A stretch of 64,000 nt of DNA from Oikopleura dioica. Its lineage: Eukaryota; Animalia; Chordata. Below are positions 1,533 to 42,250 of the stretch, one piece after another. A program made the position numbers and the translations under genes. Every line of letters begins with the position of its first letter. Position 1 is the first letter of the stretch. Location: assembly GCA_907165135.1 (NCBI GenBank), contig OU015568.1, positions 6,572,001 through 6,636,000 of the forward strand. Direction: 5' to 3'. The notes under the pieces are model-generated. The model was not told the origin of the DNA. It saw only the letters and a program-made list of their open reading frames with translations, and did not search any database.

Positions 1533-4500
1533 CTTTATCTGGAACAACTCGTCATGTTACGATCCATATTGGAGCATTTTGCCGATCCTGATTCTCGGAC
1601 ATCAGCTGTCGGAGAAATCAGCACTTGTTGGACGAGATTATGTCATTGCCACGGTTGTTCTTCTTTGGGGAGTCAGACTGACTTACAACTGGATGCGGAG
1701 CTTCAGAGCCTGGTCTCATCAAGGTAAGGCATTGGTATGTCTATGCTTTCGATCTAGGCTCGGTAACCTGTGTTGAAAACCTGAGTCAGGGTCGCAAAAT
1801 AGTACCAATAATCATTACAATTGTAATACATTTGTATTTTACCCTTAGCGAAGCCGCTTCGTGGCTTCTTTTTTGAAAAAGCCGCGTTGCGGCTTTTCGT
1901 TAAAGATCTTTCAAATCCTGACTCAGGTTTTGACATGCTGCCGAGCTCAGCTTTCGATTTTTTGGAGTTATTTCCGCTGAAAAATCGAGGTTTTTTTTCG
2001 TCGATTGTTATTTTTGAGCATTTTTATTGGTCAGAGAATCGAAAGATTTGACCATGGAAAATTTACAATCACATATTTTTGGCATTCTTGGCAATGCCAA
2101 AAACATGAAATATGGAATGTTTTTAAAGGTCTTTTTGAGTAGACAGTCTGTAACTTCAAGGCTTCTAATTTGGTTAGACAGACCGGTGAGTCTAGCTTCG
2201 TACAGCCAGAAGGGAAGTCTTAAAATTCCGGCACCAGCCACAACCTCCCGTTTGGCTTAAAAAAGACCTGAGGAAAGGGAGCTGAACATGCCACGGAATG
2301 AATTTTTGAGTTCATGTTGAATATCGTTGGTAGTTTTATTTAGCGATTATCTAAATCGCTCAACCCACAGTACAAGGATGTTCTTGTACCGGGAAAAGCA
2401 GGAGTTAGTTATCAGCGACGGTATAAAACGTGGAATAGGAGCAGGACAAGATAACCGTTTATCTTGTTATTTCGTAATTGGCATACAGACATTCGAAGGC
2501 TCTGAATTTCGTAAGGCGGCAATTTGGAACGTTTCTCGCTTTTTACAGTATTTTTCTGTAGAAAGTCGTACGGGGACGGGAAGGCTTTTTTCGCAGGCGT
2601 TATCTGCTAGTAGCTTTTCCAGCGCAAGCAAAACAAATGGGTACTTAAGGTCGTTATCACGGGATCAGTATTCAGCGTCCTGGGTAGCTAGTACGCTGAT
2701 AACCGTCGGCTTAGATGCGGCTCGATGCAGCGACAAAGGGGATAAACCAAAAAATCATGTTTCAAAGGAGCTATTGTAAGAAATGTCCTCCTCTCACAAT
2801 ATTCAGCGAATTATATCTCCTCGAATAATAATATCCAGACACTTCAAGGAGAGTCTTGTGCTTTTCGAGGGTAGCTTTCAACGGAAAAAACATGTTGATT
2901 TTTTTTTCTCACGAAATTGAGGTTGTAATCTGAATTTAATTCAGGGTCAAATCAGGTGAAGAAACTCGCTATTTTCGATGTAATGTAGTGGTAGATTCGC
3001 GGCACCTGAAATGTGCCAACTGCAGATTAGAAAAAAATAAGTTTCACTTTTCTCCGAAGTGAAGGTTCTAGTGGACCAATCAAGGGATGGTAGATAGTCT
3101 GCCGATGAGACGCTCTTTTATTATATACGATAAGAAAGCGAGCCCTTGTCGCGCATTAACTGAGTGGTGCTTAATTGAGAAGGAAATATTATGTAACACG
3201 TCGTTCGTTGGAAACGATGCTCGATCATGAACGCATTTGTTTTTCTCATTAATTAATCAGCAATGAATTAGTTGCGTTAAGCAGGTGCTGCGGCAGTTTT
3301 GTGGAAAAACGGTTTTTCCAAGAACCAAATATTTTTCGACAAAGCAAAGGGCCTTTTTCAATGGATTGAATTTCCATCTCATGTGAGTTTTGATTATTAA
3401 GAGACTCTGATTTGCGGATGTAACTCTCGGTATAAATATTTTGACATTTTAATGTAAATAAATAATATATAATAATAAACAATATTAAGACAAATTGAGT
3501 GAATGAAGTAGCTGGAAAGTGATTTGAATATGTTTTTTTTGGTTGTTTTCTCATAATATTCATTTTTCTAATGGTACGTATTTGAGCTTTTATTTACAGT
3601 TGTTGTACCTGAAATCCGGAACGAATCTAGTTTAATTTTAGCTATAATAATCAGAAAGCAAGATTTGCCTTCTAAGATTGTCGACAAGACAGTCTTGACA
3701 ATGTCGATGGCAACTGTCGATTTCCGCAAATCGTAATTACGATATGTCGAGTCTTCATTGTCTAGTCGACAATCTTAGAAGGTACCTTGATTATTATAGC
3801 TGTAATCAAACTAAATTCGTTCCGGATTTCAGATACGACAATTGCAAATGAAAGCTCAAGTACGTATCATTCTCTGGTATTACTATTATTATTAACATCG
3901 ACTCAAGATAATTAACTTTTTCCTGCCCGAATCCACGAATTTGCGTGTTTGAATTACAAGAATTCAAAACTCCACATATAAAAAAATTAGTACTCTCAAA
4001 ATATTAGCGGTTCAAATTCATTACCAACGAAAATATTTAGATTGGCGATACACTTATCTACGCGATTCAAACATTGGGTGGATGTCTCCTGTTTTCGGAT
4101 TGGTTACGTACTGGGTTGTATTCAGTGGTCTTGCCTTTCATATTTATCCGACCTTGAGCGTATTTGGCGGTCTGCTACCCGGAATCTATGCAATCGAAGA
4201 CGGTCAGACGGCGCTCAACGTACTTGATATTGTAGGAAACGGATAACTTAATTTGCGGATCAGAAATTCGAAAATCCAGCTTACTCTCTTCTACATGTCA
4301 TCAGATCATCATTCTAACTCTCAAGTAGGATTGATGCTAGGAGGATTAATGATTATCGACGTAGACAGGGCTGAAAAATGAACTTTCGGCTACTAAAAGC
4401 TGAGCTCGGCAAACTGTGCAGAAAACCTGAGTCAGGGTCTGAAAGATCTTTAATGAAAAGCTTGCAAAGCCGCTTTGCGGCTTCATATTTTCATTAAAGA

Positions 4501-27947: not shown

Positions 27948-30900
27948 CTAGACTTTTTGATACCAGTTGATTTTAAATCCATTCCAATTTCCCTCTATTC
28001 CCGATCTAGATCTGTTGCCAGTTTTGAAAACAACGGTCGCAAGCGCATTTGGTCCGTATCGAGCGTAAATGGTTACTGGAGGTTGTGAACCAGTTCCGCA
28101 GGTTTTGAGCATTGATTTGTGGTGTGGGTCTTGGGGGCTTGCTTCGAAGATCTAAAGGAGTTTGGAAAGGGTGTTGGTTTTTGGATTGAGAACCTGTAAG
28201 TATTCGTCGTCAAAGCAAGAAGAACCCTTGTCAGTTCCGTTGGGGAAAATGTTCAACTCCTTGATCTTGACATACATGGCCGTATCGTCGGCTGATTGAA
28301 TCTGCCACTCGCAGTTTTGGTTGCTATCGTACATTCTCGGCCAGTCGAAGGGGTAAAGATAACCGTTGTAGCCGCTGACTTTTCCGCCGCAGCCGGCGTG
28401 ATTGCAAGTGTAGTCGGCTTTGAAACCCTCGCCAACGACTTCGTTGATGTCAGTCGTGAAGCTAGAATTATCAATATTTTTATATCATTAAAAGTAGCCC
28501 TTACTCAAGTTGAAGATAATTTCCCGAGTAAAAATGCGGCTCAGGCAGCTCCTTGCAGCAATAAGTCTCTCTACTTCCAATCACCAGCTTGTCATTTCTA
28601 CAGCTATCCGAGCATTCCAAATCGAAGAACGAAAAGAAGACTGCCATTTTGCTCCCTTGCTCTCCTTGGATTCGAATTTGGCAATTGAGGTTTTTCGGAT
28701 AGTAGCCTCCACCAAAGTGCGACAGAATCACGCCACTTGAGTCTTCCAAAACTCGATTGCAAACTTCGCCTTTTACTCGAGCGGTGAAAGTTGGATTTCG
28801 TCCAGAACCATCGTGCTAGAATTATTTTCTCATAAATCAGTATCCATTCGATCTCAAACCTGCGTTGTTATTGTAGCATAACTTCCAAGAGAGGCAAAGA
28901 TCGGAGGTTTTTGACTTCCGCAATATCTTTTTCTCTGCCCAACTCCGTGTTGAACATTGATGTCGGCGAACTCAACAAAGCTGTTGTCGCAGTTGTGGTT
29001 GTTAGCGCACTCATATCTGTTCAAAAATCCCATCAAAAATCCTGGCATTTCCGAGCAATCGTCTGTGATCGTGTCGACAAGGACACATAAATTAGAAGCT
29101 TCTTGATAGACGAAACCAATACAGCGGAGGTCGTTTTCGCAAAACATTTCGCACTCAATGACGCCTTTGTCGACCATGTGTGTGTCGTATCCGGAGTCGT
29201 CGCAGTTGCAGAGAGTTTCGCGCTTGAAAGACCAGTCGGAACAGGTGCTGTCCTTTTTAAGGTTCGAAAGTGAGATTTTTGATCGTATTCTTTATCAGTT
29301 CGACCCAATCCTGTGGATAGGAAACACAAACATGGCCACTGGCACCAGAAGCAGCAACCGCTGCGAGCATGTCAGTAGTGCACCCTTCATTCGTATTGTG
29401 TGTATTTCCAGAACAGCAGAAGCCAACCGTCCCACAGAAATCACACGAGCCAGTTCCTCCACAAGGCTCTCGGCAATCCTCGCCCGTGAACACCTCCCAG
29501 CTTCCATCGCCTAGAAGCTCGTTATTTTATTTTTTATCAGGCAAGTTTACTTTGAGTAGTGATCTTCAAATTGCGAATCTCGGCATGGGCTGCATCACTC
29601 CATGGATTGGACGCATAGACAAGCATATCGACATAATCACGTGGTTGTTCCTGCACAACTCCGGCGTAGTTTCGTCCGTCAACTTTAATGTCCAGGATGT
29701 ATTTGCCATTTGAGATCTTCGATTGAGTTATTTCGAGGTGAATCCATTTTTGGAGAGGTTGATTGTCCGTGATCGTCACATAGTTGCTCTGCCCGTTGAG
29801 TCCCCAGGAGATGTGAAATTGAGAAGAAGTCGGCTAGGGGAATTTTTCGAAAAGAATTTCGAATTATGAGCTTACCTGAAGACTGATAAGAGGCATTCGA
29901 TCTCCATCAACACTATTTCCTTGGTCGTTATTGAGTGTCACTTGAAGAATGTTCACCCATGTATCCAGGTCATTTCTTGCGTCAAGCTTGACGTCTAGTT
30001 CGACTGAGACCGTTTTGTACATTCTCTCCAGCTCTCCAAGCTTCTTTCCCTTGGAGACCTGCATCGGTTCCAATTGGAAGACCTGCGTTGCTCCACTGAC
30101 GCCATAAGCAACTTGGGTAACAGTGAAAGTACCGGGGAATTCTTGTGTTTTCACCTTCAGCGTCGTCAGTTCTTTTCGATCGATGAATGCGTTTTCGATC
30201 GAATCATCTACTTCTATAAAAAGCGCGCCCGTGTCCTTATTCCAAACTCCAATGTAATGGTCTTCGATTCTAAGTTCGATGAAGTCGAGAAGATCGTAAA
30301 AATCCTGCACTGTATGCTGAACTGTCGCAAGCTTTTCATACTGAGCGTTGGAAATGGTCGTTTCGTACAAATCAGGTTGAGTGAGTTTCACAGCGAATTT
30401 GATGTAGAATCGAGGGTCTTGGTTGTAATCGTCGAAAAGACCAAGGAAAAAGGGAAGTGAGAAAAGGACTGTTTTGTTGATGTCAGCTGTAATATCGATT
30501 CTAGTTACTCGGCGAGCTACGAGACTATCCAGAAGAACTTGATAATTTTCCGTTGCGCGCAGGCTGATCGGAAGATTATACTCGTCAGTGGGCGCTAAAA
30601 AAGGTTAGTATTCGAGATTCAGATGATTTTCTAACCTGGAAGACTCATGGTCTGAGTCTCAATGGAAATATAGTGATGCTTGTCAGTTTTTAGAGTCCAC
30701 TGGCAATGAGAATTGTCTCCCATGTAATTCCAGTTTACATTCTTTCAAAATGTCTAGAAGGATTTTCCATTTTTTCTATGTCTAATTTTACTGACATTTT
30801 CCTGATACTCATCACTAACAGCAAGCTCTCCGCCACACTGCGAAACATACGCCGTCACTAGAATTTCAAACCCACTAGCGCCCGTGACCTCGTCAGAGAC

Positions 30901-33900
30901 AAAAATCATCACATTTTGTTGATGCGTTCCTTTGACCACCTGGTGTCCGATTTCCCCACAAGCAGGTCCGAACATAACTCGATCTTGGAAAGAGGCTCCG
31001 TCGATGATTTCAACATAGTCGTAGCAAACTCCCGTGAAACCTTCGAGCGGCTCGAGGTCAAAGTGTTTGATTTCATATTTTAGTGATATTCCCGGCTCCT
31101 CGCTGTAAATATTCCAGACGCATTCGAGATTATCTGGGTAGTCCGCGGCCGGATACAGTGGCGATTGAATCGTAGCAGTGGTTGTGACTCGAATATCACC
31201 TCCACACCCGTAAGTAGCACCGATGGTTTGAGCCCATTTCAGTTCAAAACCGGCAGATGGAATTTCAGCATCTGTTTTGTAACGCAAAGTCATTGAATTC
31301 GACTTTGACTGCAAAAACCTCGGTGGACTCTTTCCACAGTATCGTCCAATAAGATCGGCTTCTTGGGTACTATCTCCTTCAAAAGCGGCGAGATAACTTC
31401 CATGTGTTCCAGAAGAGCAGTTCACATTGACAGGGAGGTCGAAATGAATCCAGCTAGTGACTTTGACTGAATAGCTCGTATCTTCTGTTCGCAAGAGCCA
31501 GATACAATCGAGATTCTGATGCTGGCCGACAAACCCGTCCGGATGCCAGTTTGCAATCCTTCCAAATGCGCCTTCATAAGTTCCACCACATTCGTCAACA
31601 GTAAATTGCATTTCAAACCCGCTCTTTTCCACCTTATCGTTTGTCACAAAATTGACAATCATCGACCCGCGAGCACTTATGAAGCCACTTGGTCGATCAG
31701 ACCCGCAAACTTTTCGCACGAGATTCTCTTGTGCCTTTTCATTTTCATAAATCGCGACGAAATCGCTCGAGCAACCAGGAGAATCTTCAACGTCAAATTC
31801 TAAGAAACGCGCTTCAATCAGCGAGTTTTTATCACTCATCGTAATGTTCCAGTAACAATCTGTATTCGGGCGGTAGCTTCCGAGACCGAAGCCGACATTT
31901 GTGATGTAACCGATGTATTCGTCGACAAAGAGTGTGCCACAAACTTGTTCGTATTTTGCAGCGAAGCCTTTGTATTCCAAGTTGCCATCAGAGATCATGT
32001 TCAGAACCAAATGATCGAGATTTGATCTGGCTGGAGGAGGAAGTCTTCTACCGCAGTACTGGCCGATTCTGTCTGTATTGACTTCCTTTCCGTTCCAAAC
32101 ATCGACATAATCAGTCAAACATAAGTCGTTATCCGGCTCTTGCAGCCAGAAATCAGTAAATGTAAGTTCGACATGGGCATTTTTCTCAGCATTGATTGTC
32201 CAGACGCAGTTCATATTCGCCGGATAGTTAGTAGCTGGGGTACTGAAATAGCCTGGAGAGCTGATTGTTCCTTCTTGTTCTTGGAGGATTTGATTGCCGC
32301 ACTCGTTGCCTGAGAAATTCCACTGCATCGCGTAGCCAGATCGTTCGCCTCGATTGTCGGTTTTAAAGATGAACTTGAGCATGTTCTGACTTGAGTGCAT
32401 TTCTTCTCCGATTGTTGGCTTGTTCGTCGAGCACCAGAAATGTTTTTCACGTGATTGAAAGATTCCTTCGTAGACCTTTAGCCAATCATAGTCTCTGCAT
32501 TCAGATGGAGTTGTAGCGCCATCTAGATCAAAAGTGTCAAAGTAATAAGTCAGAATTTTTCCCTCAGGAGCAACAAGGTACCAAATGCAGTAATCATCAC
32601 TGTCATAGTTGTCCGGGTAGTTAGGCGAGGTCATTCTGCCGCCAACTTGCCAGTTGACTCCTACGGCTCCGAAAATTCCACCACAGGAGTGCTCCGTTAC
32701 AGTCATGTCGAATCCCTTGTAGTTGGTGTTGTGATTGGTAGAGAAGCGGATGTCATTAACAGGTCCAGGAATACCGAATGGTTTTGGATTACTCTTGCCA
32801 CAAAGAGTGTGCTGAGGGGCTTGAAGCTGTGGCTGATCATAGGGTCCTACGAGATAGAAATCGAGCTTGTCAACGCATCCATCTTCGACCTCGAGATCGT
32901 TGAACTCGTAGTAAATCGTTCCAGTAACCCAGGTGTTTTGAACGGTCCAAATGCACTCGCTATTGTCTGTGTAGTTGTTTGGATAGTTTGGAGAGCTGAT
33001 TTCAGTCGGCTCGTCCAGTACAACTGGTCCGATGCTTCCGCATGTTTTTGGAGCGATTTGTCCGTTATAATCAGCGATAAAGCCTCTGCCATTAGGTGCC
33101 GCGTCGTTTCCAATGTCAAAAACGATCTTCATCGTATTTCCCTGAGATTGGACGGGCATCGGAAGGGCAGCTCCACAAAGACGCTCGGTAAGTTCTGGTG
33201 AGTCGATGTAAAGACCGCCATAGACCTGGACATAGTGATTCAAGCAGCCATACGTATCATCAGGAGCCTTTAGATCAAAATCAGAGAAGGTCAAAATGAT
33301 GCTGTTTCGAGGATTGACAGTGATTCGCCACTCACAGCGCTTATTGGATTCATAAGGATCTGGATATTTAGGACTGAGAATGGTTCCAGCGTCTTCAGTG
33401 AGTTCTTCTGCGCAATTATTGGGAGTAGCAGTCCAGTTTAAATTCCAAGCGCTGCCAGAATGACCAGCTTGAATGTGATGGAGAACAAGCACTCCTGGTG
33501 TTCGACTTTTGATGGTTTTCTCTGGCATGTCTGCTTGATTGCCGCAGAATTTGCCGAGCGATCTTCCGATCTTTGTGTGTTCTTGTTTGAAGTCAGTAAG
33601 GACTCCTGCTGTATCGCATGGCTGCATGGAAAGAGCAGGTTCGTATGGATGCGCAGCAATGCATAAATTGATTTCTTCATCGATGAGTCTGAGCTTTCCA
33701 TCGGAAAGCATCCATTTTTGAGTATCAAGCTGCATAAGCTTGCTGACTTTCAACGGATCCCCAGCTACTGGGCCATCTGCGCGAGAGTCGATGGTAATAC
33801 CTCGCGAGGGAAGCTGAACATTTCGCAGATAAACATGATCCCACTCCCAGAGCTCGTCGTAGATGCCATCTGGATCTGCTTTTGGAAGGCGCATCACTAA

Positions 33901-36900
33901 ATCTTTTGTTTCTAGGTCCATTGCCATTACTCGTTGAGTGAGAGGATCGACGATCAAAAAGTACCCCTCGTCTGACCATTCCACAATTTCCAAAAAGTCT
34001 CCGGAAAGATAAGAGCCTCCTGACTTCTGGCACGGCACATCGAAATCTCCATAGAAATCAATAGAGACTTCATGATGATCTGGCGACTGAATGATATTTT
34101 CACAGTTGACGTCCGAAACCCGTATCGGCCTAATGGGCTCTTCAGCGGAAATAGAACCGCTCGTTCCTGTATGATATCCGCCACATGCATTTCTAGTATA
34201 GTTTGCCTCCCACCCCCTCACTGCTTTCGATTGGTGATAGACAATCTTCATCACGTTACCGACTGTTTTCGTTGTTGGAGGTTTTGTAGACCCGCAAAAG
34301 AGCTTGAAGACATCATCGTGGCTAATCAAAGTGTCGTATATCGCCACATATGCCTCGAAACAGTCATTTTTTCCGTCGGTTTTGAGATCAAAGCGTAAGA
34401 AATCAAGCATGATTGTGTGCTCTGGCTCAACAGTAAGAGTCCAAATGCAGTCAGTTTTTGTTTCAGTGATTGATGGAGATTCAATCGTTTGCAGAGCATC
34501 TGTGACTTCCAATTCTTCGCCGCAGCCGAGCGTTGGTTGTCGCCAGGAGACCTTGAAGCCTTGGTATTCTCTGTTGTTCGGGCCGGCTTTGAAGAGAAGA
34601 GAGATTGTGTTCGTTGTTGATTTAAATGGAGGCATGGCTTCATAAAAACCACAGTATCTATCGTAATGGCTCCACTCTCCTTCTGGGAAGAACGTTGGTC
34701 CATCTGGATAGCCATTGTGCAGCTCTAAATAGCCATCATCATCGCCTGTGCAGTTTCGTTTCTGATCGCCGTCGATTCCAAAGGGACTTGCAAAGTCGAG
34801 CTTTGCCACCACTCCGGGATCCAGTTTGATGATATACTCGCAAATGTCATCCGATGCGTTGTAAGCCTGAGGATAATTCCAAGACTGAATTGTGCCCGTT
34901 GATCCTTTGAAAACGCCACCGCAGATTTGTCGATAATACGCTTTGAATCCAGGATCTGTGTGAGCAGCGTTCGTGTGGAAGTGAACGATTGCATCAGCTC
35001 CTGTTGTTTTGACCGTGACGTTCTCAGCGTTGCCGCAAGGTAAGAGTGTTGCTTCGTTAGCAGTTGTTGGACCATCATAAACTTTGATGAAATCTGCTCG
35101 GCAATCGTGATCTCTTTCAATTTCGATGATCTCGAAGTTGAATAGAATCGATGCATTGTGGGTCGTTTTGAAATACCAGAAACAGTCCAAATTATTTTGG
35201 TACCCGTTCGGAAAGCCAGGAGAAATGAACGGCAGCCATTCCATTCCAGCAATGACAAGTTCATTTCCACATTCTCCCTGATTAATTGGGTCGGGATACG
35301 GAAAGACTGGAATTTCCCCTGATCCATCAACATGCGTGTAGTTCAGGAAAAAGCCATGGCCTGAGATTTCCGAGTTTGTAACGAGCCTCAATGTCAAAAT
35401 ATTCCCAGAAGAGATGCCCTTTGCTTTTTCTGGATTTTCTTGAAGATAGTCGCCGCAGCCATCGAAAAACTGAGGACTAGAGCCGAGTTCGCCATTGATC
35501 AGCATGAACCTGTCTGTGCAAATGACGTCGAAGAAAGATATCTCGTATCGAATGACACTTGTTGATTTTGCTTGAAGTGTCCAAGTCGCGTCGATTCTCT
35601 GAGGATACAGTCTTGGGTAGAGTGGAGAGGTAATTTGCCCGGCCGGGGACAAAAATGGCTTCGAGGCGCCAGAATTCATCACGAGAGTTCCTTCAAAGCT
35701 GTGTCCAAAGAGAGATCCATCAGAAACGTATCTGATTTCGTATGTCTCGTAATGGTACTGCACAAGCCAGTTTGATGCGTTTTGCTGCTTGTCACAGTAG
35801 ATCAACTCCTCAGAAACGCCATCAAAAGTGGCATTGATCCAAAGATAGTTCCTAGAGCAATCGGGGTTGTTGTTCGTATTGAAGATAAGTGTCAGCTCGA
35901 CTGGATTTCCAGGAGACTGAAAAACGTTCCAAGTACAGTCAGCTTCAATTTGATCAGTCGGAGGGTAGCGAATGTTGCCCGTGATTCCGCTCCAGTCACC
36001 TCCGCAGCGATCTTCTTCCGTGGAATAGTCGAAAGTGAACCCACTTCGTTTATTGTCACCAGAATCGTAGGTAGCGTCAAAAAGTACACGAACAATGGAG
36101 CCTTTTGAGTGATAAGGTCCAGGTGCACTTATTCCGCAATGCTTGTCGATATCGACATCATCGGGCGCAGCACCTTCGAAGATTTGGACATAATGAGCAT
36201 TTTTGCATCCCTCTTCTGTGTGATCAAAATAAGTGTCAAAGTGGTCAAAGTGAAGGAGAACTCGTTCGCCGGGAATCGAAGCTTGAATCGTCCAGGTACA
36301 ATAAGCAGGAGCGACGTAATAACTTGGATAATTTGGCGTCGCGAGAAACTGTTTCGTTCCATTAGCAAAATGATAGCCTCCGCAATTATCATGATAAGCC
36401 AGCTGAAAACCTGTCTTTTCGACGCTACTGTCACTCTTGAACTTGACCAGCGCTCGTGGGCCAGTAGACATGACTCCTTCCGGAAGCTCGTCAGGCTCAT
36501 ACGTTCCACAGAATTTCCCAAGACTTTCATCGTAAATGCTGGCTCCATCAAAGAACTCAACATAATCGGGACAGCTGTAAGTTTTCTCAAGATCCATTGC
36601 AATCCATGAAAATCGAATAATTTTATCACTGTCGGAACCGGGGCTCAGGTCAATTTGCCAAAGACATTCAGTTTTTGGCGGATACAAGCCAGGGAAACCA
36701 GGAGACTGGATCTTTCCGTCGTGCTCGTGAAGCTCTCCGCCGCAGATGCCTGGAACAGAGCGGTAAGTAGCTTTGAATTTGATGCCACTGGTGTATCTCT
36801 GCTCGTTTGCCATCAGAACAACGAGCATTTCTCCTGTATGAGAAGTTAATTTGCTATTTCCAGCACGAGACCAAGTTGCCAGCAAGTTTTTCTCGTCCAT

Positions 36901-39900
36901 GACGCTTCCGATGTACAAATTGACATAGGTCGATGAACTACCGAGGTAAGTTCCAGAAGCCATTGAAATCTCGATCATATTTCCAGTCGTCGTATTTTGA
37001 GGAACCTGTATTTGCCAAAATTGAGCCATATTTTCAGTGATGCCATTTGAGTTGAAATTGAGACTCTGAAGTGTTCCGGACTCTTCGTTTAGTTTCTCAA
37101 AATATCCTTTCGGCTGGTACTGCAGCTCAAAACCAGTTCCAGTCTGAGTAATATCGCTTCGCATCGGAACGAAATCAAAATATACCAGTCCTTTTTCCTC
37201 TTGCACTTCGATTGCATTCGCGGTTTGTCCGCAAAAGCGTGCTTTTCTGTCATTTTTGTTGTAATCTGTGTAGATGTCGAGGTAGTCGCAGTTTTGCTCA
37301 AGCGGGCAGCTGCTATCGCAACCGCCGAGATTGAAATTGTTGAAAGAAATGTCGATGTTGAAACCGGGGGAGAAATAGACAATCCAGTAGGTGTTTTGAA
37401 GTGGATAGTGGCCTGGGTAGTTGTGTGATTGAATCAAACCTTCTAGTGCCAAGCTGATTTCGTTAAATCGAACAGTCGACCAATGCAGCTTGAAGCCTCG
37501 TTCATTATTGCTGTTTGACATATCCGAGTGCATTTCAATCGCAACGACGGAAGAGTTCGATCTTACTGGATCATCGCCGCCTTCTGTTCCACACAGTCGG
37601 TCGGTAAGAGCAAATGAAGTGGTTGTTGGCCCATCGAAGAATTGGACCCAATCGCGTGTGCAACCATGAGAAGTGCCCGTCTCCAAGAAAAAGTCGTCAA
37701 ATTCGAAAAGGATCGCCGACCCAGCATTAGTTGTGACGATCCAAAGACAATCCATGTTGTTCTCATATCCACTTGGCCAACCAGGGCTGGAAAGAATTCC
37801 TTCTGTTCCAGTTCCAGTGCCGCCGCAAGTGCCCAGTTCTGATTCCCACTTCAGCTTGAACTTGTTTGGCGAGTCTGGATTGGTGTCAAGTCCATCAGAG
37901 CTTGAATCTGATACAAAATGGAACAAAAGAGTATTCATGGCGGAGTGAATCGGTTCATCATTTTGATGCGGTGGAGAGTTAGTGCTTCCATACGCGCCGC
38001 AGTATTTTCCGATCAGAAGGTTCTCGCTGCTGCCACCATCGTGGATCGACATAGAGTCAATAGAGCAGTCAGAAGATGGTCGAAGATTGAATTCAGGAAA
38101 GAAAGCGTCGATTTGATGACCCACGAGGACTTTGATGGTGATGAAACAGTCCAAAGATGGTCGATAAGAGCCAGGATATCCAGGCGAAAGATGAACACCG
38201 TCCGGCGTTTGAATTACTCTCGAACAGACAAAATCTGGATGCACTTGTCGGTATGCAAGCTCGAAGCCTTCGTATGCTGTCGAGAAATCAGTATGGAACT
38301 TCATCGTCAAGTATTCAGAGCTCGAATGGATCATATCTGGCGGATCTCTGCAAAATTTGCCGAGGAAGGTTGGATCATCGGTTGTGTTGCCGACGACGGG
38401 AGCATCCCAGATTGCGAGGTAATCAGTGCAAGTCGAGTAGCCTTCTAATTTCAAATAAATGAACTCCAGTTCTATCAAATTTCCAGAGTCTCCTCGAATA
38501 AAATAAACACAGTCGAGATTATGCGGATATGGCTGAGGATATCCAGGGGATCGAATAAAACCACTATCACCAGTGAAGGTTTGTCCGCAGCCTTCATAAT
38601 CGAACGTCGTTTTGAGCAAGAAACCGTGATCATCTTCAGATGGAATATGATTAAACATCATGAAGATGTTTCTGCCGGAAGAAAAGATCGTTTCTGGAAT
38701 CTCATTGCCGCATAAATATCCTAACTGAGGGCTCCCTCCATTTGGCCCATCGTGAATTGTAAGAGAGCTTTTACCGGGGCAGTACGAGTCCAAGCTAAGA
38801 GCGAAAACTTCAAAATTGAGCTGGATAATTTGGTTTTCTGGCGCTGTAATGTAATAAGAGCACATCTTCGCGAACGGTATCGTATTGGGAAAATACGGCG
38901 AGGAAATGTAGGTCTCGGTGAAATACGAACCGCCGCAGGTGGTCTCCCAAGATCCTTTAAAACCTTTACCGTGGTTCGATCGATCCGACTTGAATTCAAT
39001 CACCATCGTATTTTTATGAGAAACGATCGTTCCCGGCAGTTCTCGGCAAGTTTTGTTCTCGCAAATTGCATCGTTGAAATCGGCCTTATGGTAGCCGCAG
39101 AAAACGATTTGTTCTGGATCTCCTTTGTGGTCGAATCCTTTGAAGACCTTGAGCGAGTCCCATTTGCATCCGTAAGAGTAAGAATCCTCCATGTCAATCT
39201 CATCGAATGTGAATCCCACATGATCATGCATGCCCACTGTAATGCTCCAGAAACAGTACTCATCGGCTCCGTAACCTGGGTCTGGGTAGTTCACGCTCAT
39301 GAGAACTCCAGCATCTTCCTCAAGATTTTCCCCGCACTCGTTTTCCGTCGGCATTGGAACAAGTCCCAACTCGAAACCTTTATTGAAAGAGTTCATTCCC
39401 GAAGTACTAAAGATCACATAAGCGATTGGCGTTTCCGTACTCAGAGTAGCGTCGCTTGTCGTGTTACAAATCTGACCAAGACGGGTTTCAGTCTGCAGTC
39501 CGTCGTAAACCTCGACTTGATCTTCGCACCGACCAGAGTAAAGATCAATATTTGTAAACGTCAGTTGTAGTTTTTCTTGCGGATCTGCTTCGAAGACCCA
39601 GACGCACTCGATAAATGGATTATATGGTTGAGGATAGACCGGAAGTGAGAGCTGAGCAGGTCCATTTACGCGAATAACTCCGCCGCATTTTGTCTCTTCC
39701 TGCACCCACGACATGGTGAAACCAGTGTATTGATTGTTGTTGGAGCTGTCAGCAGCGAAGACCACTTGTAATCTGTTGGTGTAAGTATTGTTTACTTGGG
39801 GAATGATATTGCCGCAGTATTTGATCGCATTTTCCTCCTCATCTCCATCAATGAGTTCAACGTAGGTAAAGCAAGTCGATCCATGCTTCGGTGGCAAATC

Positions 39901-41356
39901 AAACTTGGAGAAATCCATTGAAATCCCGAATCCGCCATCAACAACGATGCTCCAAATGCATTTAGTGTTCGGTGAATAATAATCAATTCCTGTTGGATAA
40001 TCAATCACTCCACTAGATTCTTCAATGTCTCCACCGCATTGTCCAGCAGGCAAGTTGCAAATTTTACCCGTCCAGTCATCGGGACAAGTGCATCTGAAAT
40101 CAGTTCCGCCGTTGATAGTCTCGCACTCTGCATTATGAAAACAAGGGTTGGGTTTGCAAGGATCGCCTCGTTCGTCACAGTGAGTTCCCGCCCAGCCTTG
40201 GTAGCAGATACAGACAGGGGAGCCGTTCTGAATGAGACAGACTCCATTGTTGCATTCAAGATTGCAGTCGATTGGGTCTGGCCCAGGTCCATCAGCTTTG
40301 CATCCATCCGGGCCAATACCATTTCCAGAGTAGCCATGACCGCATTTACAAGAGAACTCGCCGTTGTTGTCGGTACAAGTAGCAAATGGGGAACAAGGGT
40401 TACTATCGCAAGCAGAGTGTTTTCTGCAAAATCGTCCGTCACCTTCATATCCATTCGGACACTCGCCACAACTGGTTCCAGTCGAAGATTTGCGACAAGA
40501 AACTTTTGGATTTTGGCTGCAGCCACCATTGTTAATGCTACAGTAATCGACGGATTCACATGCGACGCCATTTCCTGCCATTCCAGTTGGGCAAGCTCCG
40601 CAGCTGTAGGATCCAATGTTGTCAATGCAGTCAACTCCTGGGTAGCACAAGTGCGCTCCAGTTGCACACTCGTCGATATTTTCGCAAGTCTTTTTGTTCT
40701 CATCGTATTCGAATCCTTTTTGGCAGATGCAGGAGTACTTAGCTGTGCCAGGATGAGTTCTGACTCCGTCCACGCAAAAACCATGTGGGCCACATTCATC
40801 TCCTTTCGGACAATCGTCATGTTTTGACTCGCAATGAGTTCCGTAAAATTCCGCTGGGCAGGTGCATGAAAATCTCTCCGGCGGTTTCGAATTAAAACAA
40901 GTCCCACCGTTCAAGCAAGTGTAAACGCCATGGTCAGTGCATTCGTTGTAGTCGTCCTGGCAGGTAGATCCGGTCCAGCCGTGAGCGCACTGGCAGCTGA
41001 AGCCGGTATTGCCACTGATGCAAGTTGCTCCGTTGTGGCAGTTGTTCGAAGAGCAATGATTGACTTTGAGGCCATCGACATCGCTGTTTAGCTGGTCGAT
41101 GTCTTCTGCGACTTGGGCGAAATCTTTGTTGTTGATCAGAACCGTCCCTGTCTGTTTTTACAGTTAGATAATAGATTTCGATTTCTGAAAGAAAAAAACT
41201 TTGCTAACTTCCCTGATCAGTAACAAATAAAATATCCTTGCCATTGCCAGGTTCAAATCGAAGGTTGCCATTGACAGAATTGACTCTTGGCTGCGAATCA
41301 AGCTGCGCTAGAATCGGATTTAAAACGAGAATGAAGAGCCTTTTCAAGCGCTTCAT
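27948..41356 (-). CDS. CUBN: Cubilin orthologue: signal peptide, N-terminal stalk, 8 EGF and 27 CUB domains, with two domain insertions
   Basis: MKRLKRLFILVLNPILAQLDSQPRVNSVNGNLRF resembles the cubilin N-terminus. A manual count gives 8 EGF repeats and 27 CUB domains when the split CUB25 is counted once. The giant exon is 30796-41151, and the stop follows GFKINWYQKV. Confidence 0.92.
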
Positions 41357-41479
41357 TTATGATAATTATTTCTCTTTTTTGAGAAGAGTGAAATTAGAAG
41401 CGAGCGCATCAGTGTTAGTGCTGCACTGCTAAATACAAATAGAAAATGCGTGAACATGCTTTATCATTATTCAATAAAA

Positions 41480-42250
41480 TCACCATTCGAAGGTGATTTT
41501 TCCCAGCTCTGCAGTCGTGACGGTCGACAACACGGAGAGCACTTTCAAGGCAAGTTTGTGGTCCCGCTTGTCCTCAAGCTCGATGTAGGCGAAGCTCTGT
41601 TGAGTTTTGACGTGAAGAGCGACTTTCAATTCCAAAAAAAGGCCCTTGACTCCGTTGTCGACCAGAATCTTCTTGATCGAATCCGCTTGCACGCCGTTTG
41701 GAACGCCACTAATCCAGATGCCGTTCTTGACTCCAGTCGCTGGAGATGCAGCCCCAGCTTCATTCTCAGCGTTTTCGGCCGGCTCTTCTTCTTCATCCAA
41801 GTCCTCCGCCGGTGAGCTTTGATCAACATTCATCGGAACAGGAACGTGTCCTAGAAAATCATCAGCTATTACGATCCCTTTTCTTTTTTATTTACCAGGG
41901 TCTTCTTCGGTCATTTCCGCGACCACATTTTCATCTTCATTTGCCGCAAGCATCTTTTGTTCTTTGGCTCGGGCTAAACGAAATGAAGCTTTCGATAAAA
42001 CGATGATGACTCCTACCTTTGCATCCCTTATTTCCACGATGCTGCAGCATCCTATACTTTTCGCGGAATGCATGGCCACAGATATCGCAGGCAAAGGGCT
42101 TTTCTCCACTATGGATCATCTGATGTCTTGCCATGTCGCGTCCCGCCCGAAACTTCTTTCCACAGGTGGAGCACTGAAAAAATTGTTTCTGAGATCTCTC
42201 AGTCTCGTGTCTACCTCTTCCATGATTTTTCCCATATCTCTACTGTAGAA
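41480..42250 (-). CDS. Two C2H2 zinc fingers + acidic linker + C-terminal RRM-like domain (5' end unresolved; may include 42283-42612)
   Basis: CSTCGKKFRAGRDMARHQMIH-SGEKP-FACDICGHAFREKYRMLQH, spliced in frame to ..GIWISGVPNGV..QSFAYIELED (RNP2/RNP1-like). Confidence 0.7.

What the first reader, a model, noticed from the sequence alone, without database searches (positions are those of the whole stretch)
29010..30600. Cubilin CUB25 is split by a ~500-aa multi-domain cassette
CUB25 begins CGGELAVSDE..NSHCQWTLKTDKHHYISIETQTMSLP and stops. Its second half (ECANNHNCDNSFVEF..RYCGSQKPPIFASLGSYATITTQ/HDGSGRNPTFTARV) appears ~1.6 kb later. Between them are a possible SEA-like region, a ConA/LamG-like module (WVNILQVT..GDRMPLISL..VYASNPWSDAAHAEIRNLKI), a Cys-rich CREPCGGTGSCDFCGTVGFCC motif and a PAN/apple-like domain. 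Joining the halves restores the canonical count of 27 CUB domains, which supports insertion into a CUB loop rather than fusion of two genes. With CUB17 this makes two independent lectin-like insertions in one receptor.
Basis: partly seen in the sequence, partly recalled or inferred. Interest (0 to 1): 0.75.

Follow-up and report, generated by a model that had tools for sequence, protein, structure and literature searches.

The report
Lectin-like cassette nested in cubilin CUB25
In the tunicate Oikopleura dioica, the nutrient-uptake receptor cubilin keeps its usual 27 CUB domains, but the 25th is cut in two by about 480 conserved amino acids of lectin-like modules. This is a rare nested insertion in an otherwise very stable protein architecture.

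Summary
The window is Oikopleura dioica (Okinawa OKI2018_I69). Its minus strand carries a cubilin gene: one 10-kb exon followed by eight small exons with 40-60 nt introns.

A CUB profile built here matches CUB25 as two complementary pieces, positions 1-51 and 47-109. Pfam's CUB profile gives 15-48 and 49-93. About 480 residues lie between them. Counting the two pieces as one domain gives 27 CUBs, as in 97 other cubilins.

It is one gene, not two:
- In the Atlantic lineage, CUB24, the CUB25 first half and the first cassette exon form one intron-free open frame.
- In both lineages, the last cassette module and the CUB25 second half share one exon.

Cassette and halves are under purifying selection (pN 0.05-0.21, pS 0.5-0.9).

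- The "SEA-like" part models as a galectin-like beta-sandwich, distantly related to the FAMeT domain.
- The LamG-like module is supported.
- The Cys-rich stretch has no family match.
- PAN is below Pfam's cut-off.

CUB domains split by an insert are already known in complement C3 and alpha-2-macroglobulin, so this is a new variant of a known kind.

The parts
30802..30837 (-). Start of CUB25 (CGGELAVSDEYQ), at the end of the 10-kb giant exon
   Evidence: Own CUB HMM positions 1-12. Public model P0001 residues 3627-3638.
30742..30801 (-). 60-nt GA-AG intron. It is absent in the Atlantic lineage.
   Evidence: The P0001 junction reads ..DEYQ|NVNW... Atlantic genomic DNA reads straight through with the same length (..DEWQDINW..).
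30636..30741 (-). Exon B: the rest of the CUB25 N-half (NVNWNYMGDNSHCQWTLKTDKHHYISIETQTMSLP), ending in phase 1
   Evidence: Pfam CUB profile 22-48, E 0.014. Own HMM to position 51. 83% aa identity to the Atlantic lineage, pN 0.08 against pS 0.59.
30098..30594 (-). Cassette module 1 (exon C residues about 4-165): galectin-like beta-sandwich, distantly FAMeT-like
   Evidence: No Pfam hit. phmmer hit to P0123 (E 2.8e-4), which is Pfam Methyltransf_FA at 6.4e-12. hhalign to the FAMeT family: 83%, C-terminal half only. AF2 model has pLDDT 70-90 over residues 8-165. VIA-align Z 14.0, rmsd 2.4 A, 136 aligned residues to the galectin-8 N-domain.
29876..30070 (-). Cassette module 2, first third (end of exon C): LamG/ConA-like module
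   Evidence: hhalign to module family A1: 75.5%, E 2.4e-5. phmmer hit to P0122, residues 178-234.
29551..29833 (-). Exon D: cassette module 2, last two thirds (LamG/ConA-like)
   Evidence: hhalign to A1: 98.5%, E 2.2e-15. A1 members match Laminin_G_3. A1 member model matches neurexin LNS, laminin LG and galectins. pN 0.13 against pS 0.69.
29311..29510 (-). Exon E: 8-cysteine stretch (CREPCGGTGSCDFCGTVGFCC...C...C) with no family assigned
   Evidence: No Pfam, Atlas or regex relatives. All 8 Cys are conserved in the Atlantic lineage. 87% aa identity, pN 0.10 against pS 0.52.
29016..29252 (-). Exon F, first 79 codons: PAN/apple-like domain
   Evidence: PAN_1 E 8.6e-4, 19.5 bits against cut-off 21.4. 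PAN_4 E 2.5e-3 in the Atlantic copy. 63% aa identity.
28860..29015 (-). Exon F, last 52 codons: CUB25 C-half (YECANNHNCDNSFVEF...YCGSQKPP...ATITTQ), in the same exon and frame as the PAN-like part
   Evidence: Own HMM 47-109, iE 1.6e-8. Pfam CUB profile 49-93. PDB 3KQ4 cubilin, E 5.5e-5. 90% aa identity, pN 0.06 against pS 0.66.
28774..28815 (-). First 14 codons of exon G: last strand of CUB25 (HDGSGRNPTFTARV)
   Evidence: Own HMM up to position 109. 93% aa identity to the Atlantic lineage.
27948..28773 (-). CUB26 and CUB27 (rest of exon G, exons H and I) and the stop codon
   Evidence: Pfam CUB 8.7e-9 and 5.2e-8. Own HMM. Best position-specific profiles are CUB26 and CUB27.

Best explanation
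This is the single cubilin gene of Oikopleura dioica. It keeps the ancestral run of EGF repeats followed by 27 CUB domains.

In CUB25, the loop between the strand ending '..F..F.lE' and the third conserved cysteine (Pfam CUB position 48/49) carries a nested insert of about 480 residues that appears to be always included. The insert has four modules:
- a galectin-like beta-sandwich distantly related to the FAMeT domain;
- a LamG/ConA-like module of an uncharacterised family from marine eukaryotes;
- an 8-cysteine stretch;
- a PAN/apple-like domain.

Shown: one reading frame runs through both junctions; the cassette is single-copy; cassette and both CUB halves are under purifying selection in two deeply diverged lineages.

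Inferred: the two halves still pair into one CUB beta-sandwich, as the CUB of complement C3 and alpha-2-macroglobulin does around its inserted thioester domain. The cassette would then project from the loop face as an extra binding head, probably for glycans or glycoproteins, near the far end of the receptor.

The cassette was most likely captured from a secreted lectin-like gene that this genome no longer holds.
For: Complementary half-domain matches: own HMM 1-51 and 47-109; Pfam 15-48 and 49-93; C-half to solved cubilin 3KQ4. All four canonical Cys are kept.

The total is 27 CUBs only if the halves count as one, and 97 other cubilins have 27. The summed position-specific score is highest for CUB25, but narrowly: 45.0 bits against at most 43.2.

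One gene:
- Atlantic genomic L002:5122-6345 translates without a stop through CUB24, the CUB25 N-half and exon C.
- The PAN-like part and the C-half are one exon in the Okinawa lineage and in the Atlantic-type contigs L008 and L009.
- Public model P0001 joins all these exons.

Selection: pN 0.05-0.21 against pS 0.52-0.93 in every cassette exon and both halves. The C-half is the most conserved piece, at 90-93% aa identity.

Module identities. No paralogue of exons C, D, E or F in the genome. The precedent of a domain inserted into a CUB is stated in bioRxiv 10.1101/2022.05.10.491262.
Against: - No transcript data were available here.
- Each half alone is below Pfam's CUB cut-off (14.7-16.1 bits against 21.4).
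- The residues that bind Ca2+ in ligand-binding CUBs are replaced in CUB25 (..MSLP, CDNSF..), so the domain may be structural only.
- A four-module insert must loop back for the halves to meet.
- No sugar-binding residues were identified, so 'lectin-like' describes the fold, not a shown activity.
- Position-specific profiles put CUB25 second for each half taken alone.
Confidence: 0.75

Rival explanations
1. The two CUB25 halves are relics. The insertion destroyed CUB25 as a fold, and the halves survive only as linkers or as extra strands packed onto neighbouring domains. Functionally the cassette would then replace CUB25.
For: Each half is below Pfam's cut-off. The Ca2+-site residues are lost. 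The long multi-module insert makes re-pairing geometrically demanding. The fold was not tested.
Against: The halves are the best-conserved parts of the region: C-half 90-93% identity with pN 0.05-0.06, N-half pN 0.08. All four disulfide cysteines are kept and the HMM coordinates are exactly complementary. C3 and A2M show that a CUB tolerates a large insert.
Confidence: 0.15
2. The halves pair between chains. Cubilin is a trimer, so the N-half of one chain could complement the C-half of another and tie the far ends of the trimer together.
For: Only indirect: the distance spanned by a four-module insert would favour swapping. Trimeric cubilin is established knowledge and was not tested here.
Against: Nothing in the sequence calls for it. 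The nested CUB of C3/A2M pairs within one chain.
Confidence: 0.05
3. There are two genes or an optional cassette. Either cubilin ends near 30.6 kb and a separate lectin-like gene follows, or the cassette is skipped in the main isoform.
For: No RNA data were examined. Exon B is flanked by introns in the Okinawa lineage.
Against: In the Atlantic lineage there is no stop, no intron and no start between the N-half and exon C. The C-half sits in the same exon as the PAN-like part in both lineages, so skipping the cassette exons also removes half of CUB25. The only strong internal acceptor-like site before the C-half (29019-29029) is out of frame with exon B (reading). Every exon keeps the frame through to CUB27.
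Confidence: 0.04
4. The arrangement is an assembly artefact of the Okinawa genome.
For: None found.
Against: The same order appears in the Bergen assembly FN654755.1 and in two JGI metagenome contigs.
Confidence: 0.01

Closest known systems
Cubilin (CUBN) of vertebrates and other bilaterians
   Same: EGF repeats followed by 27 CUB domains. The best database matches are cubilins, at 26-30% identity over 90-99% of the queried part. CUB18, CUB26 and CUB27 match their own position-specific profiles best. An amnionless-like sequence is present in the genome.
   Different: None of the 118 other cubilins retrieved carries a comparable multi-domain insert. The largest in-domain gaps are 174 aa in one frog model and 33 aa in Owenia CUB22, the latter in the same loop. 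Here CUB25 holds about 480 extra residues and CUB17 about 128.
CUB domain of complement C3/C4/C5 and alpha-2-macroglobulin, with the thioester domain nested inside
   Same: A CUB beta-sandwich made of two sequence segments separated by a large inserted domain. From my own recollection of the C3 structure, not tested here, the split there also leaves about 50 residues before and about 60 after the insert.
   Different: That insert is a single alpha-helical domain whose two ends lie close together. Here the insert is four modules in tandem, mostly beta-sandwiches. There is no sequence relationship, and the host protein is a different family.
Uncharacterised LamG-like module family of marine eukaryotes (for example P0122 with EGF plus three modules, P0127, and Clytia hemisphaerica protein P0130)
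   Same: Module 2 aligns over its whole length to this family, sharing the motifs W.NI..T, GDR.P, W..V.I.Q and DPW...A.A.I.N. P0127 also combines the module with PAN domains.
   Different: The family's conserved cysteine pair (LHIC...C) is replaced in O. dioica (FHIS...Y). Here there is one copy, nested in a CUB, rather than tandem repeats.
Methyltransf_FA (FAMeT) domain, Pfam PF12248
   Same: Weak sequence similarity over the C-terminal half and an all-beta sandwich model. Metagenome fragment P0121 shows the same neighbouring order, module 1 then module 2.
   Different: No direct Pfam match in either lineage. The family's invariant EIVLGGW motif is not recognisable.

Membership tests
Cubilin | 27 tandem CUB domains | tested here: met
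   25 whole and 2 split CUBs in P0001. 97 of 118 other cubilins have exactly 27.
Cubilin | EGF repeats before the CUB array | tested here: met
   EGF, EGF_CA, EGF_3 and cEGF hits in the first ~290 residues of the giant exon. The number of repeats was not counted.
Cubilin | Closest relatives are cubilins | tested here: met
   Apart from the two O. dioica proteins, all named hits among the top 120 are cubilin, cubilin-like or CUBN, or unnamed or hypothetical models of cubilin length and domain content.
Cubilin | Partner amnionless present in the genome | tested here: inconclusive
   One exon-sized PF14828 hit just above the cut-off (32.5 bits against 30.4). The gene was not examined.
CUB domain (PF00431), for the split CUB25 | The profile is covered once, in order, by the two halves | tested here: met
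   Own HMM 1-51 and 47-109. Pfam 15-48 and 49-93.
CUB domain (PF00431), for the split CUB25 | Score above Pfam's gathering cut-off | tested here: not met
   Each half scores 14.7-16.1 bits against a cut-off of 21.4. That is expected for half-domains. The joined sequence was not scored.
CUB domain (PF00431), for the split CUB25 | Four conserved cysteines (two disulfides) | tested here: met
   CGG.. and ..HCQW in the N-half..NCDNSF.. and ..YCGS in the C-half. They are conserved in the Atlantic lineage.
CUB domain (PF00431), for the split CUB25 | The halves fold into one beta-sandwich | not tested
   This needs the joined sequence.
ConA-like / Laminin_G_3 (PF13385), module 2 | Direct Pfam match | tested here: not met
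   No hit at E<=1 for exons C or D in either lineage.
ConA-like / Laminin_G_3 (PF13385), module 2 | Homology to a family whose members match the Pfam model and have the fold | tested here: met
   hhalign 98.5% and 75.5%. 5 of 14 members match Laminin_G_3, best E 1.3e-15. The member's model matches LNS/LG and galectin structures. The Atlas lead points the same way.
Methyltransf_FA (PF12248), module 1 | Pfam match and the conserved EIVLGGW core | tested here: not met
   No Pfam hit. hhalign 83% over the C-terminal half only. The motif is not seen. Treated as fold-like and possibly remotely related, not as a member.
SEA domain, module 1 | Alpha/beta SEA fold or a Pfam SEA match | tested here: not met
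   No SEA hit. The model is an all-beta galectin-like sandwich.
PAN/apple | Pfam match above the cut-off | tested here: inconclusive
   PAN_1 scores 19.5 bits against 21.4. PAN_4 scores 18.3 against 27 in the Atlantic copy. The Cys pattern is compatible.

The most novel reading that the evidence does not exclude
O. dioica cubilin has been turned into a glycan-reading endocytic receptor. CUB25 would refold around, or swap between chains of the trimer around, a two-lectin-fold plus apple head that binds dietary or house-derived polysaccharide or glycoprotein. That would be a ligand class and a binding mode that no other cubilin has.
Probability: 0.15. Interest if true: 0.65.

Novelty: new variant of a known kind. 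Interest (0 to 1): 0.42.

Why it matters
Cubilin's 27-CUB layout is almost invariant from annelids to mammals. Here that layout is kept while one CUB is opened to host a conserved four-module cassette. This is a natural test of how much a CUB beta-sandwich can carry in one loop.

It is a second, independent case besides the thioester domain of C3/A2M. It is also a concrete example of a fast-evolving chordate adding binding modules to an old receptor.

The work also gives a first context for two poorly known module families: a LamG-like family with no Pfam model of its own, and a FAMeT-like sandwich.

It does not open a new kind of system. The exons are already joined in the public gene model, although none of the papers searched describes the arrangement.

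Tried and rejected
- Pfam on each cassette exon in both lineages gave nothing for exons C, D and E, and only sub-threshold PAN.
- An exhaustive HMMER search of exon C against 1.84 billion representatives gave only three weak hits. It did not return the O. dioica proteins themselves, so the absence of other cubilins there is not conclusive.
- Own-genome searches for paralogues of exons C, D, E and F found none. Methyltransf_FA gave no hit in the genome, but the controls were silent too.
- The Atlas search on the Cys-rich exon gave no usable hit. A regex for its motif found nothing in the 146 proteins held at that point.
- Position-specific CUB profiles, tried as an orthology test, were only weakly informative, and several control domains failed too.
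- Literature searches found nothing on Oikopleura cubilin and nothing on split CUBs apart from A2M.
- An internal acceptor-like site before the C-half was considered as a way to skip the cassette. It was rejected because it is out of frame with exon B (reading).
- SEA was rejected on fold.
- My first splice model used GT donors at 30795 and 29304. It was replaced by the GA-AG junctions of P0001, which fit the Atlantic sequence.
- Searches failed on coordinate or length slips and were corrected.

Full report
Source and gene. The giant minus-strand ORF at 30754-40914 is 100% identical to Oikopleura dioica protein Oidioi.mRNA.OKI2018_I69.PAR.g10227.t1 (P0001, 4465 aa). All other strong matches are cubilins at 26-30% identity. 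The window is therefore tunicate DNA, not human. Introns are 40-60 nt.

Exon model. On the minus strand the giant exon ends at 30802. It is followed by exon B (30741-30636), C (30594-29876), D (29833-29551), E (29510-29311), F (29252-28860), G (28815-28505), H (28461-28194) and I (28151-27948, including the stop). All junctions keep one frame, and the model agrees with P0001. Two introns (30801-30742 and 29310-29253) are GA-AG. The Atlantic sequence supports these junctions rather than the nearby GT sites I tried first.

The split CUB. I built a 111-position CUB HMM from ten cubilins. On P0001 it finds 25 whole CUBs and two pairs of partial hits.
- CUB17: HMM 1-67 at residues 2511-2582 and HMM 64-110 at 2711-2760.
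- CUB25: HMM 1-51 at 3627-3674 (iE 2.8e-4) and HMM 47-109 at 4154-4217 (iE 1.6e-8).

By reference, Pfam CUB matches the N-half at profile 15-48 (Atlantic copy, E 0.04; Okinawa exon B 22-48, E 0.014) and the C-half at 49-93 (E 0.034). The C-half also matches solved cubilin CUB5-8, PDB 3KQ4 (E 5.5e-5). The N-half weakly matches the spermadhesin PSP-I CUB from its first residue. The break lies in the loop between the strand '..ISIETQTMSLP' and the third cysteine, and all four canonical cysteines are kept. With the halves counted once the total is 27, and 97 of 118 other cubilins have exactly 27 full CUBs. Position-specific profiles put CUB25 second for each half and first by summed score (45.0 bits against at most 43.2). 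That support is weak, because several control domains also miss their own index.

One gene. The Bergen (Atlantic) assembly FN654755.1 (L002) has the same order. There, CUB24, the CUB25 N-half and exon C are one uninterrupted frame with no introns: L002:5122-6345 translates without a stop. Its exons F and G fall in an N gap. Two JGI marine metagenome contigs of the same lineage (L008, L009) supply them. Exon F is again one frame containing the PAN-like part and the C-half. Both junctions of the cassette are therefore seen inside continuous exons. Skipping the cassette exons would also delete half of CUB25, and the one strong acceptor-like site ahead of the C-half is out of frame with exon B.

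Selection between the Okinawa and Atlantic lineages. Synonymous sites are near saturation (pS 0.52-0.93), while pN is as follows:
- N-half: 0.08
- exon C: 0.085
- exon D: 0.13
- exon E: 0.10
- PAN-like part: 0.21
- C-half: 0.05-0.06
- neighbouring CUBs: 0.08-0.10

What the cassette is.
- Module 1 (exon C residues about 4-165) has no Pfam hit. An exhaustive HMMER search gave three weak hits. One of them, P0123, is a Pfam Methyltransf_FA protein. hhalign of the exon C orthologues against eight FAMeT proteins gives 83% over the C-terminal half only. An AF2 model (pLDDT 70-90 over residues 8-165, with an alignment that includes those FAMeT proteins) is an all-beta sandwich. Its best match is the galectin-8 N-domain (Z 14.0, rmsd 2.4 A, 136 residues), followed by other galectins and L-type lectins. 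It is not SEA.
- Module 2 (end of exon C plus exon D) aligns to a repeated module found in P0122, the Clytia protein P0130 and others, with hhalign 98.5% and 75.5%. Five of 14 members match Laminin_G_3. A member's model (pLDDT 80.8) matches neurexin LNS, laminin LG and galectins. The Atlas lead agrees.
- Exon E is an 8-Cys stretch with no relatives found.
- The PAN-like part is below the cut-off in both lineages.
- Metagenome fragment P0121 has module 1 followed by module 2 at about 30% identity, so that pair probably existed as a unit before capture. No paralogue remains in this genome.

Comparison with known cases. None of the 118 other cubilins has a comparable insert. Owenia CUB22 has 33 extra residues in the same loop. 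A CUB split by a nested domain is known from alpha-2-macroglobulin and, from established knowledge, from complement C3. Nothing on Oikopleura cubilin was found in the literature searched.

Steps left out. Exons were searched by reference. Where a spliced product was needed, I used the public protein P0001 as returned, and only in local scripts. I left out folding or profile-scoring of the joined CUB25 halves and of the whole cassette, so whether the halves refold into one CUB remains an inference.

Verdict. This is a new variant of a known kind and of moderate interest.

Noticed in passing
window 41204-42134, minus strand: Public model P0001 begins with a C2H2 zinc-finger and RRM-like segment spliced onto cubilin. 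An ORF at 41204-41356 starts with a signal-peptide-like MKRLKRLFILVLNPILA followed by a cubilin-type N-terminus, so the annotated gene is probably a chimera of two genes.
   Followed up: partly
window 30742-30801 and 29253-29310, minus strand: Two GA-AG (non-GT) introns. The first is absent in the Atlantic lineage. At the second, the Atlantic lineage also lacks any GT at the donor.
   Followed up: partly
L009:195-438; L002:6908-7066: In the Atlantic lineage the E-F intron is enlarged by a palindromic foldback insert of about 200 nt. It sits beside the assembly gap that hides exons F and G in the Bergen assembly.
   Followed up: no
window 33586-33969, minus strand: CUB17 is also split (own HMM 1-67 and 64-110) by 128 residues, in a different loop from CUB25. 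That insert has no Pfam hit at E<=1, so its ricin-B reading is not verified here.
   Followed up: partly
P0084 residues 3086-3118 (Owenia fusiformis cubilin, CUB22): A 33-residue insert in the same CUB loop as the O. dioica CUB25 cassette, which suggests this loop tolerates insertions.
   Followed up: no
G000:C4:6778452-6778562 (L010): An amnionless (PF14828) match just above the family cut-off. It may be the cubilin partner gene.
   Followed up: no
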